Shown: in pieces, positions 24,611 through 26,896 of the stretch | How positions within the stretch are numbered: position 1 is the stretch's first letter | Layout: each line of letters begins with the position of its first letter | From: Octopus sinensis | Taxonomy: Eukaryota | Assembly: GCF_006345805.1 (NCBI RefSeq) | Contig: NW_021834789.1 | Location: 1 to 35,174 of the forward strand | Direction: 5' to 3' | DNA: 35,174 bases | Position numbers and translations under genes: made by a program | The notes under the pieces: model-generated | Seen by the model: only the letters and a program-made list of their open reading frames with translations | Database searches by the model: none | Told to the model about the DNA's origin: nothing

Positions 24611-24760
24611 ATATATATAATATATATAAAATAATATATCAACAATCAAGGAACGGCCATAATAGGCCATTCACCCACTAGAAATAACAGCCAAAGCTTC
24701 AACCGCAAATAAAAATCAATTCCGTAAACAGGAGAAAATTTAAAAAACATTTACCCTGCA

Positions 24761-24867
24761 ATTTCTTAGACGATGCACCGTTTCATCTGCTGTTTAATGG
24801 TAAACTAACCTGATTAAATTAAATCAAGCCAATCTTCCATAGGCCCTCAGATTCCTCAGTAAGAAAT
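24761..24867 (-). ncRNA. Type I hammerhead ribozyme, array copy 1
   Basis: Reverse complement of the 26548-26654 fold. Predicted cleavage between 24769 and 24768. Confidence 0.85.
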
Positions 24868-25248
24868 AGCCCAGTCGGAACAGATATTTTCACGAGGCAT
24901 TTCCGACCCTGTCAAGGCAATATCTGACCTAAAATTTTCAAATCATCGCACTCGCGCCAAATTTATCGGCAGCAAATAAATATAAGCCGTCGATTCCATT
25001 ACGGAATTAACCAGAAAATTCATAATTAATCATATAGGGCGGCAAAAAAATTTTGTAGATTTTTTTGCCACCAGCGGCCTAGTGGGAAAAAAATTAAATA
25101 GTCATAGACCATTTTTAAGTTCAACATCAACAATCAAGGAACGGCCATAATAGGCCATTCACCCACTAGAAATAACAGCCAAAGCTTCAACCGCAAATAA
25201 AAATCAATTCCGTAAACAGGAGAAAATTTAAAAAACATTTACCCTGCA

Positions 25249-25355
25249 ATTTCTTAGACGATGCACCGTTTCATCTGCTGTTTAATGGTAAACTAACCTG
25301 ATTAAATTAAATCAAGCCAATCTTCCATAGGCCCTCAGATTCCTCAGTAAGAAAT
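25249..25355 (-). ncRNA. Type I hammerhead ribozyme, array copy 2
   Basis: Same fold, offset +488. Confidence 0.85.
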
Positions 25356-25736
25356 AGCCCAGTCGGAACAGATATTTTCACGAGGCATTTCCGACCCTGC
25401 CAAGGCATTATCTGACCTAAAATTTTCAAATCATCGCACTCGCGCCAAATTTATCGGCAGCAAATAAATATAAGCCGTCGATTCCATTACGGAATTAACC
25501 AGAAAATTCATAATTAATCAATATAGGGCGGCAAAAAATTTTGTAGAATTTTTTTGTCACCAGCGGCCTAGTGGGAAAAAATTAAATAGTCATAGACCAT
25601 TTTTAAGTTCAACATCAACAATCAAGGAACGGCCATAATAGGCCATTCACCCACTAGAAATAACAGCCAAAGCTTCAACCGCAAATAAAAATCAATTCCG
25701 TAAACAGGAGAAAATTTAAAAAACATTTACCCTGCA

Positions 25737-25843
25737 ATTTCTTAGACGATGCACCGTTTCATCTGCTGTTTAATGGTAAACTAACCTGATTAAATTAAAT
25801 CAAGCCAATCTTCCATAGGCCCTCAGATTCCTCAGTAAGAAAT
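25737..25843 (-). ncRNA. Type I hammerhead ribozyme, array copy 3
   Basis: Same fold, offset +976. Confidence 0.85.
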
Positions 25844-26547
25844 AGCCCAGTCGGAACAGATATTTTCACGAGGCATTTCCGACCCTGCCAAGGCAATATC
25901 TGACCTAAAATTTTCAAATCATCGCACTCGCGCCAAATTTATCGGCAGCAAATAATATAAGCCGTCGATTCCATTACGGAATTAACCAGAAAATTCATAA
26001 TTAATCAATATAGGGCGGCAAAAAATTTTGTAGAATTTTTTTGCCACCAGCGGCCTAGTGGGAAAAAAATTAAATAGTCATAGACCATTTTTAAGTTCAA
26101 CATCAACAATCAAGGAACGGCCATAATAGGCCATTCACCCACTAGAAATAACAGTCTAAGAAATTGCAGGGTAAATGTTTTTTAAATTTTCTCCTGTTTA
26201 CGGAATTGATTTTTATTTGCGGTTGAAGCTTTGGCTGTTATTTCTAGTGGGTGAATGGCCTATTATGGCCGTTCCTTGATTGTTGATGTTGAACTTAAAA
26301 ATGGTCTATGACTATTTAATTTTTTTCCCACTAGGCCGCTGGTGGCAAAAAAATTCTACAAAATTTTTTTGCCGCCCTATATTGATTAATTATGAATTTT
26401 CTGGTTAATTCCGTAATGGAATCGACGGCTTATATTTATTTGCTGCCGATAAATTTGGCGCGAGTGCGATGATTTGAAAATTTTAGGTCAGATATTGCCT
26501 TGGCAGGGTCGGAAATGCCTCGTGAAAATATCTGTTCCGACTGGGCT

Positions 26548-26654
26548 ATTTCTTACTGAGGAATCTGAGGGCCTATGGAAGATTGGCTTGATTTAATTTA
26601 ATCAGGTTAGTTTACCATTAAACAGCAGATGAAACGGTGCATCGTCTAAGAAAT
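26548..26654 (+). ncRNA. Type I hammerhead ribozyme, array copy 4 (inverted arm), predicted cleavage after 26646
   Basis: AUUUCUUA(26548-55)-CUGAGGA(26556-62)-AUCUG...CAGAU(26563-67/26626-30)-GAAA(26631-34)-CG-GUGCAU-CG-UC|UAAGAAAU(26647-54). Confidence 0.87.
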
Positions 26655-26896
26655 TGCAGGGTAAATGTTTTTTAAATTTTCTCCTGTTTACGGAATTGAT
26701 TTTTATTTGCGGTTGAAGCTTTGGCTGTTATTTCTAGTGGGTGAATGGCCTATTATGGCCGTTCCTTGATTGTTGATGTTGAACTTAAAAATGGTCTATG
26801 ACTATTTAATTTTTTCCCACTAGGCCGCTGGTGGCAAAAAAATTCTACAAAATTTTTTGCCGCCTATATTGATTAATTATAAAATAATATATATAT

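What the first reader, a model, noticed from the sequence alone, without database searches (positions are those of the whole stretch)
24641..26880. A young 488-bp tandem repeat in which every unit encodes a complete type I hammerhead ribozyme (candidate cephalopod retrozyme / circRNA source)
Seen: near-identical 488-bp non-coding units, each containing AUUUCUUA-CUGAGGA-AUCUG...CAGAU-GAAA-CG(GUGCAU)CG-UC|UAAGAAAU. That gives an 8-bp perfect stem I, the full catalytic core, a 5-bp stem II base, a short stem III and a GUC triplet, with four full copies. Established: tandem genomic repeats with one type I hammerhead per unit are the hallmark of metazoan non-LTR retrozymes, which self-cleave into monomers that circularise and are thought to depend on Penelope-like elements. 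Inference: transcripts of this array would yield ~488-nt monomers or circles. Whether this family is already described cannot be determined without a search. Caveat: the first stem II pair is A-U rather than the commoner G-C.
Basis: partly seen in the sequence, partly recalled or inferred. Interest (0 to 1): 0.93.

Follow-up and report, generated by a model that had tools for sequence, protein, structure and literature searches.

The report
Octopus hammerhead-ribozyme retroelement, inverted insertion
This is a recent insertion, in an octopus genome, of a small non-coding mobile element whose ~490-base repeats each carry a self-cleaving hammerhead RNA motif; it is a new member of a known class (animal "retrozymes"), and the shape of the insertion gives a clue to how such elements are copied into DNA.

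Summary
The motif is real. A descriptor scan finds exactly five complete type I hammerheads in the window: four in the array and one in an older, 22%-diverged copy at 1701-2016. About 0.003 are expected by chance. The old copy keeps all 11 required core bases and changes only N7 and H17. All 35 base pairs are kept, four of them in stem I through changes on both strands.

The locus is two arrays placed head to head: 3.1 units on the - strand (24638-26154) and 1.5 units on the + strand (26155-26880). A 15-bp target-site duplication in AT-rich microsatellite brackets the whole structure. The old copy has the same design, the same two outer termini and a (TA)n target.

Constant 3' ends, variable 5' junctions with microhomology, multimeric arms and a TSD point to twin-primed reverse transcription of multimeric or circular RNA. 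This is the insertion pattern described for Penelope-like elements. The genome is an octopus.

Caveats:
- Rfam Hammerhead_1 scores only 19.3 bits (gathering score 34).
- The 10.1-11.1 pair is A-U.
- Cleavage and circular RNA are untested.
- I could not retrieve any other genomic copies.

Verdict: a new member of the metazoan non-LTR retrozymes, of moderate interest.

The parts
24625..24639 (.). Left copy of the target-site duplication TATAAAATAATATAT. Its last 2 nt overlap the end of the element.
   Evidence: The same 15-nt word lies at 26878-26892. Only 22 of 4682 control pairs of 41-nt windows at the same spacing share a word that long.
24638..26154 (-). Minus-strand arm with 3.1 units. Read 5'->3' on the - strand it runs unit positions 81-490, two full 488-nt units, then 1-131. 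Its 3' end (terminus 1) faces outward to the left.
   Evidence: TRF: period 488, 3.1 copies, 98% matches. BLAST of the sense unit. Inverted repeats I1-I8.
24761..24867 (-). Type I hammerhead, copy 3 of the - arm. Predicted cleavage between 24769 and 24768.
   Evidence: Descriptor hit: stem I 8 bp, stem II 5 bp, stem III 4 bp, GUC.
25249..25355 (-). Type I hammerhead, copy 2 of the - arm. Predicted cleavage between 25257 and 25256.
   Evidence: Descriptor hit; identical to the other copies.
25737..25843 (-). Type I hammerhead, copy 1 of the - arm. Predicted cleavage between 25745 and 25744.
   Evidence: Descriptor hit.
26154..26156 (.). Head-to-head inversion junction, ...AACA[G]TC|TAAGAAAT. 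The + arm starts 0-3 nt upstream of the predicted cleavage site and the - arm starts at unit position 81. There is 1 nt of microhomology.
   Evidence: Sequence; BLAST end points. A random junction falls within 3 nt of the cleavage site about 7 times in 490.
26155..26880 (+). Plus-strand arm with 1.5 units: one full 490-nt unit (26157-26646), then unit positions 1-237. Its 3' end (terminus 2) faces outward to the right.
   Evidence: BLAST; direct repeat D3 and the inverted repeats.
26548..26654 (+). Type I hammerhead of the + arm. Stem I 26548-26555 / 26647-26654; core CUGAGGA 26556-26562; helix II 26563-26630 (5-bp base, then 4-bp and 14-bp inner helices); G12-A14 26631-26633; helix III plus loop 26634-26645 (ACGGUGCAUCGU, self-complementary); C17 26646; cleavage between 26646 and 26647.
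   Evidence: Rfam Hammerhead_1 aligns to model positions 1-45 of 45, 19.3 bits, E=0.017.
26878..26892 (.). Right copy of the target-site duplication TATAAAATAATATAT. Its first 3 nt overlap the end of the element.
24638..24649 (-). Terminus-1 motif UUGAUUGUUGAU-3' (unit positions 120-131), 12 nt 3' of an 8-bp hairpin. Candidate site where reverse transcription starts.
   Evidence: The same terminus is used by the old copy. It is 9/12 identical to terminus 2, and only 3 of 490 unit positions (itself included) are that similar.
26869..26880 (+). Terminus-2 motif UUGAUUAAUUAU-3' (unit positions 226-237), 17 nt 3' of a 15-bp hairpin (GGUGGCAAAAAAAUU...UUUUUUUGCCGCC).
   Evidence: The hairpin also appears as the spurious mir-5728 match.
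1701..2016 (-). Older, diverged insertion of the same family (differs from the young unit at 22% of alignment columns). The main arm runs on the - strand from 1996 to 1701 (unit positions ~316-490, then 1-131). A short inverted arm lies on the + strand at 1989-2016 (unit positions 205-232). The two are joined through the 8-nt palindromic microhomology AAAATTTT (1989-1996). Flanked by (AT)n at 1662-1701 and a TA-rich tract at 2017-2030.
   Evidence: BLAST; sequence; TRF; alignment.
1822..1927 (-). Hammerhead of the old copy: UUACUUUA-CUGAUGA-AUC(U)G...C-GAU-GAAA-CGAUGCAUUG-UA|UAAAGUGG. Predicted cleavage between 1830 and 1829.
   Evidence: Descriptor hit: stem I 8 bp, stem II 3 bp, GUA. Pair counts. 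Not recognised by Rfam.

Best explanation
The locus is a recent single-event insertion of a non-autonomous, non-coding retroelement of the metazoan non-LTR retrozyme kind, in an octopus genome. Its ~490-nt unit carries one type I hammerhead ribozyme.

Proposed mechanism (the sequence facts are shown, the process steps are inferred):
1. Sense transcripts containing at least two units fold the hammerheads co-transcriptionally. This probably happens through pairing of two motifs, because helix III is marginal as a hairpin but forms a 12-bp self-duplex. [quoted passage not shown]
2. The monomers can be ligated into circles. The circles adopt a stable branched fold in which the catalytic core is sequestered.
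3. For integration, a staggered break in a (TA)n-like target supplies two 3'-OH primers.
4. Each primer starts reverse transcription on multimeric or circular retrozyme RNA at one of two similar entry motifs, a hairpin followed by UUGAUU..UU.AU-3' at unit positions 131 and 237. Each copies more than one unit length.
5. The two cDNAs are joined at their ends through microhomology.
6. The result is two head-to-head multimeric arms with constant outer ends, a variable inner junction and a 15-bp target-site duplication.

The enzyme supplied in trans is most likely a Penelope-like element RT/GIY-YIG endonuclease.
For: Shown:
- Five complete type I hammerheads against 0.003 expected per window, and 0 in 84.5 kb of control DNA.
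- Rfam Hammerhead_1 aligns over its full length, although below threshold.
- In the old copy, which differs at 22% of columns, all 11 required core bases are kept and the changes fall at N7 and H17 only.
- 35 of 35 pairs are kept in both copies, with 4 changes on both sides in stem I and 7 wobble-mediated changes on one side. Slid controls pair 25-45% of cells.
- The hammerhead-constrained fold lies within 1.8 kcal/mol of the MFE.
- Helix III as a hairpin is worth about 0 kcal/mol. As a self-duplex it is worth -17.5 kcal/mol (young) and -14.5 kcal/mol (old). This is the dimer design described for metazoan type I hammerheads (PMC4209133).
- The circular sense RNA has an MFE of -143.2 kcal/mol against -113.3 +/- 5.5 for shuffles (z = -5.5). 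The antisense strand reaches only -98.9 kcal/mol, so the structure is strand-specific. GC is 37%.
- No ORF exceeds 42 aa.
- The arms are head to head, both are longer than one unit, and the units are 99-100% identical.
- A 15-bp TSD brackets the whole structure.
- A second, independent insertion has the same two outer termini, a different inner junction at an 8-nt microhomology, and a (TA)n target.

From the literature:
- Tandem-plus-inverted 5'-truncated copies and a (TA)n bias are described for Penelope-like elements (PMC8557442).
- Retrozymes are proposed to be non-autonomous derivatives of Penelope-like elements (bioRxiv 10.64898/2026.07.22.740005).
- O. vulgaris has recently active Penelope families (PMC13282606).
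Against: - Rfam does not call a hammerhead at its gathering score: 19.3 bits against 34. It reports nothing when the region or the whole window is scanned, and nothing for the old copy.
- The 10.1-11.1 pair is A-U, whereas G-C is the most conserved pair of the consensus after 15.1-16.1 (PMC3088659).
- Helix II is 68 nt, far longer than the canonical 4 bp, and no loop-loop tertiary contacts could be identified.
- Only two independent copies were available. No further copy turned up in 81 kb of O. vulgaris DNA, in metagenome scans or in protein-handle searches. Family-wide conservation is therefore untested.
- No RNA data were available.
- The window shows no Penelope-like ORF.
- The + arm includes 2-3 nt upstream of the cleavage site, so it is not a clean copy of a ribozyme-cleaved 5' end.
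- The 106-nt offset between the two termini is larger than the 30-40-bp tail described for Penelope-like elements.
Confidence: 0.8

Rival explanations
1. The element is a retrozyme as described, but it is mobilised by a non-LTR (LINE) reverse transcriptase through classical twin priming rather than by a Penelope-like element. Candidates are the microsatellite-targeting Dong-R4 or RTE/CR1 elements that are abundant in octopus.
For: - Twin priming by LINEs also gives inverted 5'-truncated arms, microhomology junctions and TSDs of 10-20 bp (established knowledge).
- Dong-R4 is the most abundant recently active LINE group in O. vulgaris (PMC13282606), and Dong-type elements target microsatellites (my own knowledge).
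- The window holds LINE RT fragments, with an RVT_1 match at 346-963, and no Penelope-like ORF.
Against: - There is no poly(A) or LINE-like 3' tail between the element ends and the TSD.
- Type I hammerheads and tandem-plus-inverted multimeric insertions are hallmarks of Penelope-like elements, not of LINEs (PMC8557442, PMC4209133).
- (TA)n is the target reported for the Neptune and Naiad clades (PMC8557442).
Confidence: 0.15
2. This is ordinary satellite DNA that expanded by unequal crossing-over or replication slippage. The hammerhead-like motif would be a chance or relic feature with no role in RNA processing or mobility.
For: - Rfam's score is below its threshold.
- The A10.1-U11.1 pair is atypical.
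- No expression data are available.
Against: - The motif is about 300-fold rarer by chance than observed.
- Compensatory changes in stem I, and core changes confined to N7 and H17 in a copy that differs at 22% of columns, indicate selection on the RNA fold.
- Unequal crossing-over cannot produce two oppositely oriented multimeric arms bracketed by a single TSD, nor a second dispersed copy with the same termini in another (TA)n tract.
- The fold energy is strand-specific.
Confidence: 0.04
3. The locus is a 5'-truncated remnant of an autonomous Penelope-like element, that is, only its pseudo-LTR region, and not an independent non-autonomous family.
For: - Pseudo-LTRs of Penelope-like elements carry type I hammerheads and form tandem and inverted structures (PMC8557442, PMC4209133).
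- Heavy 5' truncation is typical of these elements.
Against: - More than three consecutive identical units of 488-490 nt carry no ORF sequence between them.
- A truncated autonomous element would show the 3' part of an RT/EN ORF upstream of the repeat, and none is present.
- The hammerhead has a full helix III and an 8-bp helix I, unlike the minimal motifs reported in metazoan pseudo-LTRs (PMC4209133).
Confidence: 0.08
4. The inverted structure is a DNA-level event or an artefact: a TIR-bounded DNA transposon or MITE, palindrome formation, or a long-read assembly chimera.
For: - The two outer ends resemble each other in inverted orientation: ATCAACAATCAA... at one end and ...TTGATTAATTAT at the other.
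- Inverted duplications are a known class of assembly error (my own knowledge).
Against: - The arms meet out of register (unit position 81 against position -2), so this is not the perfect palindrome an adapter-skipping chimera would give.
- Unique flanks with a 15-bp TSD bracket the structure.
- The old copy has the same ends but a completely different internal junction and length, 315 bp against 2243 bp. That fits variable 5' truncation by reverse transcription, not cut-and-paste of a fixed element.
- A 15-bp TSD is atypical for DNA transposons (my own knowledge).
Confidence: 0.03

Closest known systems
Metazoan non-LTR retrozymes (Cervera & de la Pena 2020, NAR, PMC7229834), e.g. those of the coral Acropora millepora, the mussel Mytilus galloprovincialis and the axolotl
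   Same: Non-coding, low-GC tandem repeats with one type I hammerhead per unit. TSDs longer than 4 bp when present. Predicted highly self-paired circular monomer. No LTR organisation.
   Different: The unit is 488-490 nt, against about 170-400 nt reported. Helix II is a 68-nt extended hairpin instead of about 4 bp plus a loop. The 10.1-11.1 pair is A-U. The host is a cephalopod, which is not mentioned in any retrozyme or hammerhead paper I could search. The cited papers do not describe the head-to-head two-arm insertion with defined termini for retrozymes.
Penelope-like element insertions (Arkhipova 2006; Craig et al. 2021, PMC8557442), including the pseudo-LTR hammerheads (Cervera & de la Pena 2014, PMC4209133)
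   Same: Partial tandem plus an adjacent inverted 5'-truncated copy. Insertion into (TA)n microsatellites. One end extends further than the other. A type I hammerhead lies in the repeated part, with a palindromic helix III/loop 3 suited to dimer cleavage.
   Different: No RT/GIY-YIG ORF, so the element is non-autonomous. The hammerhead has a full helix III (3-4 bp) and an 8-bp helix I rather than the minimal motif. The offset between the two termini is 106 nt rather than 30-40 bp. Homology to an octopus pseudo-LTR could not be tested.
pDo500 satellite of Dolichopoda cave crickets (PMC2837043)
   Same: A repeat of about 500 bp with one hammerhead per unit. The hammerhead region is conserved with compensatory stem changes, including at 10.1/11.1. 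Dimeric hammerhead models have been proposed for it.
   Different: A different phylum, with no sequence relationship tested. pDo500 is described as satellite DNA. The paper passages I read (a keyword search only) did not describe dispersed insertions with TSDs or inverted arms.
L1-type twin priming (Ostertag & Kazazian 2001; my own knowledge)
   Same: Both 3'-OH ends of a staggered break prime reverse transcription. This gives an inversion with 3' ends facing outward, a microhomology junction and a flanking TSD.
   Different: There is no poly(A) tail. Both arms are multimeric, which implies a circular or concatemeric template. The two priming sites are specific internal motifs. A ribozyme is present.

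Membership tests
Hammerhead ribozyme, type I (Rfam RF00163 / consensus of Hertel numbering) | Catalytic core C3 U4 G5 A6 N7 G8 A9, G12 A13 A14, the A15.1-U16.1 pair, and H17 not G | tested here: met
   All are present in the four young copies (GUC) and in the old copy (GUA). The only differences between young and old are at N7 and H17.
Hammerhead ribozyme, type I (Rfam RF00163 / consensus of Hertel numbering) | Three helices around the core, with helix I open-ended (type I topology) | tested here: met
   Stem I 8 bp, stem II 5 bp plus inner helices, stem III 3-4 bp. All 35 pairs are kept in both copies.
Hammerhead ribozyme, type I (Rfam RF00163 / consensus of Hertel numbering) | G10.1-C11.1 pair (the most conserved pair after 15.1-16.1) | tested here: not met
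   A-U in both the young and old copies. Natural active exceptions with U-U are documented (PMC3088659, PMC7229834), so this lowers the expected activity rather than excluding it.
Hammerhead ribozyme, type I (Rfam RF00163 / consensus of Hertel numbering) | Score at or above Rfam's gathering score (34 bits) | tested here: not met
   19.3 bits, E=0.017, full-length alignment with a 58-nt insert in loop 2, and only when 136 nt are searched alone. No hit in the window or region scans or for the old copy.
Hammerhead ribozyme, type I (Rfam RF00163 / consensus of Hertel numbering) | Mg2+-dependent site-specific self-cleavage | not testable with these tools
   Requires in vitro transcription of monomer and dimer constructs.
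Metazoan non-LTR retrozyme (PMC7229834; operational criterion of bioRxiv 10.64898/2026.07.22.740005) | A tandem repeat with a complete type I hammerhead in at least two consecutive units | tested here: met
   The - arm has three consecutive hammerheads spaced 488 nt apart. The + arm has only one.
Metazoan non-LTR retrozyme (PMC7229834; operational criterion of bioRxiv 10.64898/2026.07.22.740005) | Non-coding, without LTR organisation, and of low GC (<45-50%) | tested here: met
   The longest internal ORF is 42 aa. GC is 37%. The structure is tandem units only. PBS and PPT motifs were not specifically searched.
Metazoan non-LTR retrozyme (PMC7229834; operational criterion of bioRxiv 10.64898/2026.07.22.740005) | Monomer size of roughly 170-400 bp | tested here: not met
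   488-490 bp. This is larger than the reported range but similar to the cricket pDo500 repeat (PMC2837043). Size is descriptive rather than strictly defining.
Metazoan non-LTR retrozyme (PMC7229834; operational criterion of bioRxiv 10.64898/2026.07.22.740005) | TSDs longer than 4 bp when present, indicating retrotransposition | tested here: met
   A 15-bp TSD at 24625-24639 and 26878-26892; controls 22 of 4682.
Metazoan non-LTR retrozyme (PMC7229834; operational criterion of bioRxiv 10.64898/2026.07.22.740005) | Expressed as unit-length linear and circular RNA | not testable with these tools
   No transcriptome access. Only the predicted circular fold is available (z = -5.5).
Penelope-like element type of insertion (PMC8557442) | Partial tandem plus an adjacent inverted 5'-truncated copy, with 3' ends facing outward | tested here: met
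   Seen in both the young and the old insertion.
Penelope-like element type of insertion (PMC8557442) | Insertion bias for (TA)n microsatellite | tested here: met
   The young copy lies in the AT-rich tract ...ATATATAATATATATAAAATAATATAT.... The old copy lies between (AT)n at 1662-1701 and a TA-rich tract at 2017-2030. There are only two cases.
Penelope-like element type of insertion (PMC8557442) | A 30-40-bp tail extension at one end only | tested here: inconclusive
   The inverted arm ends 106 nt further along the unit than the main arm (position 237 against 131). In the old copy the whole inverted arm is only 28-32 nt and lies within that extension.
Penelope-like element type of insertion (PMC8557442) | An ORF encoding a telomerase-like RT and a GIY-YIG endonuclease | tested here: not met
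   None in the element and none among ten non-repetitive window ORFs of >=90 aa tested against Pfam. This is expected for a non-autonomous dependant, so the locus is not itself a Penelope-like element.
Penelope-like element type of insertion (PMC8557442) | Sequence homology of the unit to the pseudo-LTR of a resident Penelope-like element | not testable with these tools
   No octopus repeat library or eukaryotic genome DNA search was available.

The most novel reading that the evidence does not exclude
These two insertions would be direct structural evidence for how animal retrozymes integrate. Both 3'-OH ends of a staggered break in (TA)n prime reverse transcription at two specific internal entry motifs, each a hairpin followed by UUGAUU..UU.AU. 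The template is circular or concatemeric retrozyme RNA, which is why both arms are longer than one unit. The two cDNAs are then joined by microhomology. If this holds genome-wide, the retrozyme carries its own duplicated recognition signal for a Penelope-type RT/endonuclease. The junction lying 0-3 nt from the ribozyme cleavage site would record a ribozyme-generated RNA end in genomic DNA. In addition, a hammerhead with an A10.1-U11.1 pair and a 68-nt helix II would be an active natural variant outside current search models.
Probability: 0.35. Interest if true: 0.65.

Novelty: new member of a known kind. Interest (0 to 1): 0.45.

Why it matters
Retrozymes are a recently recognised class of mobile elements that spread through small self-cleaving circular RNAs. 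Which enzyme mobilises them in animals, and how they integrate, is still inferred mainly from co-occurrence and phylogeny.

This locus adds a cephalopod family to the class. It also shows a hammerhead that curated models miss: Rfam scores it below threshold because of a long helix II and an A-U pair at 10.1-11.1.

The more useful point is that it preserves an unusually legible insertion. It is young, it has an intact TSD, both arms are multimeric, and it can be compared with an old copy that shares the same termini. That turns the idea of rolling-circle reverse transcription by a Penelope-type enzyme into something testable by a simple genome-wide survey of termini, junctions and targets in octopus assemblies.

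The inverted arms could also form long hairpin RNA if read through, which makes them a possible small-RNA source.

If the survey finds only these features in a handful of copies, this remains an ordinary new family of a known class.

Tried and rejected
**Searches that led nowhere**
- Rfam at the gathering score over the whole window: no hit.
- Rfam at E<=10 over 24500-27000: only spurious miRNA, sRNA and snoRNA matches. The "mir-5728" match is simply the 15-bp A/U hairpin of the unit.
- Rfam on the old copy: no hammerhead.
- Exact-ORF look-ups with three ORFs, two inside the unit and one adjacent (91, 34 and 40 aa): none on record.
- A six-frame conceptual translation of the unit against 5.8 billion proteins: no hit.
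- Metagenome scans with the conserved 21-mer and with a family-level gapped pattern: 0 hits each.
- BLAST of the unit against 81 kb of O. vulgaris chromosome fetched through SINE-derived proteins: no copy.
- A LINE-tail ORF (13690-14097) used for taxonomy: only unnamed ENA and JGI hits at <=69% identity. The two hits looked up (P0001, P0009) come from assembly ERZ25067903, which is uninformative.
- ARAGORN: no tRNA in the window.

**Readings considered and rejected**
- A coding function: the longest internal ORF is 42 aa.
- A chance motif.
- An adapter-skipping assembly palindrome: the arms are out of register and bracketed by a TSD.
- A TIR DNA transposon: the ends are constant but the interior is variable.
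- Two independent insertions: the TSD brackets the composite.
- An internal pol III A/B-box promoter: inspection by eye found only weak partial matches, so I make no claim.

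
Full report
**1. Checking the observation**

The sequence at 24638-26880 is made of near-identical units of 488-490 bp (TRF period 488, 98% matches; pairwise 99-100%). The units differ at about ten sites. Most of these are homopolymer-length differences and none lies in the ribozyme.

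- stem I: AUUUCUUA / UAAGAAAU, 8 bp
- core: CUGAGGA
- helix II: base AUCUG / CAGAU enclosing a 58-nt insert
- G12-A14: GAA
- helix III: ACG(GUGCAU)CGU
- cleavage site: C17 at 26646, cleavage between 26646 and 26647

I wrote a type I hammerhead descriptor: stem I >=5 bp, CUGANGA, stem II >=3 bp, GAAA, stem III >=3 bp including A15.1-U16.1, and H17. It finds exactly five hits in the window. Four are in the array and one is elsewhere, at 1822-1927 on the - strand. In 300 dinucleotide-preserving shuffles the mean is 0.003 hits per window, and no shuffle matched the observed stringency. The descriptor finds none in 84.5 kb of other DNA, 81.4 kb of it octopus.

The unit has no coding capacity. Its longest ORF is 42 aa.

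**2.

The locus is not one tandem array. TRF ends the array at 26154. Inverted-repeat analysis and BLAST of the sense unit show two arms:
- A - strand arm at 24638-26154. Read 5'->3' it runs unit positions 81-490, two full units, then 1-131.
- A + strand arm at 26155-26880, with one full unit and then positions 1-237.

The arms are joined head to head, with their 3' ends facing outward. Three hammerheads lie on the - strand (24761-24867, 25249-25355, 25737-25843) and one on the + strand. Only - strand transcripts contain the two or more cleavage sites needed to release unit-length RNA.

**3. Rfam**

Rfam reports no hammerhead at the gathering score, and none at E<=10 when 2.5 kb is scanned. 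When the 136-nt stretch is given alone, Hammerhead_1 (RF00163) aligns over model positions 1-45 of 45. The score is 19.3 bits against a gathering score of 34, with E=0.017. Scaled to the whole window this would not be significant, so the case has to rest on other evidence.

**4. Independent evidence from a second copy**

BLAST found an older copy of the same element at 1701-2016 on the - strand (79-89% identity in BLAST). It differs from the young unit at 22% of alignment columns.
- All 11 strictly required core positions are identical.
- The only core differences are at N7 (G to U) and H17 (C to A), the two positions where a hammerhead tolerates change.
- On a young-versus-old alignment with the hammerhead structure imposed, all 35 pairs form in both sequences.
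- Four stem I pairs changed on both sides (A-U/U-G, A-U/U-A, C-G/U-A twice).
- Seven further pairs changed on one side through G-U wobble. None is broken.
- Sliding the 3' partners by 1-3 columns drops pairing to 25-45%, with 0-1 changes on both sides.

With only two sequences the column-shuffle control is weak (31 of 500). The slid control and the compensations in stem I indicate selection on the fold. The old copy's helix II base is weaker, at 3 bp plus a bulge, and Rfam does not recognise the copy at all.

**5. Properties of the RNA**

- The catalytic fold is energetically accessible: the hammerhead-constrained fold gives -29.1 kcal/mol against an MFE of -30.9 for the young motif.
- Helix III is marginal as a hairpin (-0.2 kcal/mol, and 0.0 in the old copy). 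However, the 12-nt segment ACGGUGCAUCGU (old copy: ACGAUGCAUUGU) is fully self-complementary and forms a 12-bp duplex of -17.5 kcal/mol (old copy -14.5).
- A short helix III capped by a palindromic loop, cleaving as a dimer in tandem transcripts, is the canonical design of metazoan type I hammerheads (PMC4209133, PMC7229834).
- The 490-nt circular monomer of hammerhead polarity folds at -143.2 kcal/mol against -113.3 +/- 5.5 for shuffles (z = -5.5). Its antisense strand reaches only -98.9 kcal/mol. The structure therefore depends on G-U pairs and is specific to the sense RNA. GC is 37%.
- In that circular MFE fold the 5' strand of stem I pairs with the core, giving an inactive conformer. This is what would be expected of a circle that should not re-cleave. 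That reading is an inference.

**6. Anatomy of the insertions**

*Young insertion.* It is bracketed by the 15-nt word TATAAAATAATATAT at 24625-24639 and 26878-26892, overlapping the element ends by 2-3 nt. Only 0.5% of control window pairs share a word that long. The duplication flanks the composite of both arms, so the whole structure arrived in one event. Both arms are longer than one unit. Oppositely oriented arms cannot exchange by unequal crossing-over, so the template was already multimeric or circular. The inner junction (26154-26156) puts the start of the + arm 0-3 nt upstream of the predicted cleavage site, which has a chance of about 7 in 490. It is not exact, because 2-3 nt of the preceding GUC are present.

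*Old insertion.* It has the same design on a smaller scale. The main arm covers unit positions ~316-490 and then 1-131. A 28-nt inverted arm covers positions 205-232. The two are joined at the 8-nt palindromic microhomology AAAATTTT (1989-1996). The copy lies between (AT)n and a TA-rich tract.

*Shared termini.* Both insertions use the same two outer termini, to within a few bases: unit position 131 and unit position ~237. The last 12 nt of the two termini are 9/12 identical (UUGAUUGUUGAU and UUGAUUAAUUAU). Only 3 of 490 unit positions, the terminus itself included, are that similar. Each terminus lies 12-17 nt 3' of a stable hairpin.

Constant 3' ends, variable 5' junctions with microhomology, and a TSD are the signature of target-primed reverse transcription with priming from both sides of a staggered break.

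**7. Organism and possible helpers**

The window's high-copy SINE-like ORF (33735-34022) hits only proteins named Octopus vulgaris, at up to 83-86% identity. The window's interspersed repeats match O. vulgaris chromosomes (GCA_951406725.2) at 84-94%. An octopus genome is supported. The exact species is not established.

O. vulgaris carries recently active Penelope families (30 families, 329 insertions). It also carries abundant Dong-R4 LINEs (PMC13282606). No Penelope-like ORF is present in the window: Pfam on ten ORFs gave only a LINE-type RVT_1 fragment at 346-963.

**8. Comparison with what is known**

The element meets the descriptors of metazoan non-LTR retrozymes (PMC7229834):
- a type I hammerhead in each unit of a non-coding, low-GC tandem repeat;
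- a TSD longer than 4 bp;
- a self-paired predicted circle.

It differs in these respects:
- unit size (488-490 nt against about 170-400 nt);
- a 68-nt helix II;
- an A-U pair at 10.1-11.1. G-C there is the most conserved pair after 15.1-16.1, although natural U-U variants are active (PMC3088659, PMC7229834).

The insertion architecture matches what Craig et al. describe for Penelope-like elements: a partial tandem plus an adjacent inverted 5'-truncated copy, a (TA)n bias, and one end extended (PMC8557442). Here the extension is 106 nt rather than 30-40 bp.

None of the retrozyme, hammerhead or octopus-repeat papers I could search mentions a cephalopod hammerhead or retrozyme. None describes this two-arm insertion structure for retrozymes. 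I cannot exclude an entry in repeat libraries that I could not query.

**9. Verdict**

The retrozyme interpretation is supported.

The best explanation (confidence about 0.8) is a young, single-event, twin-primed retro-insertion of a hammerhead-bearing non-autonomous element in an octopus genome. A Penelope-like RT/endonuclease is the most likely helper, at about 0.6 within that explanation. A microsatellite-targeting LINE is the main alternative.

Self-cleavage, circular RNA and the identity of the helper are inferred, not shown. Family-wide conservation could not be tested, because every route to further copies failed.

This is a new member of a known kind. Its interest is moderate, and it comes mainly from how legible the insertion is as a record of the integration mechanism.

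Noticed in passing
window 28776-29582: A 184-bp tandem repeat (4.4 copies, 95% matches) whose unit contains a tRNA-like B-box-like stretch (GAGTTCAAATTCCGCCGAGG). It matches several places in O. vulgaris loci L003 and L005 at 86-90%, so it is a dispersed SINE-like repeat that here occurs as a tandem array. ARAGORN and Rfam call no tRNA.
   Followed up: partly
window 17894-18172 (-), 24283-24600 (+), 27292-27639 (-), 33735-34022 (+): Four copies of a SINE-like repeat that contains an internal 63-68-bp tandem (GGTGCTTTTTACGTGCCACC...). It yields a spurious ORF (MLAWVGRFDRGSGKPEGC...GAFYVPPAQVPGEAGNGH) that is annotated as hypothetical proteins in Octopus vulgaris. One copy lies about 40 bp from the left end of the young retrozyme insertion.
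   Followed up: partly
window 26897-27172 (+): A 91-aa ORF (…GRGRPRKTWNKVIKLDLRALGLTEAMTKDRDLWRYAV…) begins 17 bp after the retrozyme's right end and about 5 bp after the right TSD copy (26878-26892). It looks like the C-terminal tail of a non-LTR retrotransposon ORF. It has no Pfam hit and no exact record.
   Followed up: partly
window 346-963 (+) and 13690-14097 (+): Fragments of LINE-type retrotransposons. One is an RVT_1 match (E=5e-6, FADD-type motif) that follows a CT-rich low-complexity tract. The other is a 135-aa ORF whose homologues (<=69% identity) carry no source names; the two looked up (P0001, P0009) lie on large contigs of the ENA assembly ERZ25067903.
   Followed up: partly
window 11702-12846, 14399-14526, 15033-15316: Very long (ATA)n / (TAA)n microsatellites of up to about 510 bp. 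A perfect 40-bp x 3.0 tandem (12275-12395) is embedded between two of them. Tracts like these are the kind of target used by microsatellite-specific retroelements.
   Followed up: no
window 26341-26376 and equivalents in every unit (e.g. 26014-26048, 26830-26864): A 15-bp A/U-rich hairpin (GGUGGCAAAAAAAUUCUACAAAAUUUUUUUGCCGCC) scores as a weak false match to the plant miRNA family mir-5728. It sits 17 nt upstream of terminus 2 and may belong to the signal where reverse transcription starts.
   Followed up: partly
window 24638-26880 as a whole: The two arms are about 725 bp of near-perfect inverted repeat. Read-through transcription from either flank would therefore give a long hairpin RNA, a possible substrate for small-RNA pathways. 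It would also make the locus hard to assemble from short reads.
   Followed up: no
window 20379-20462: An (AGCCG)n pentanucleotide repeat (16.8 copies, 94% matches) lies inside a 159-aa spurious ORF.
   Followed up: no
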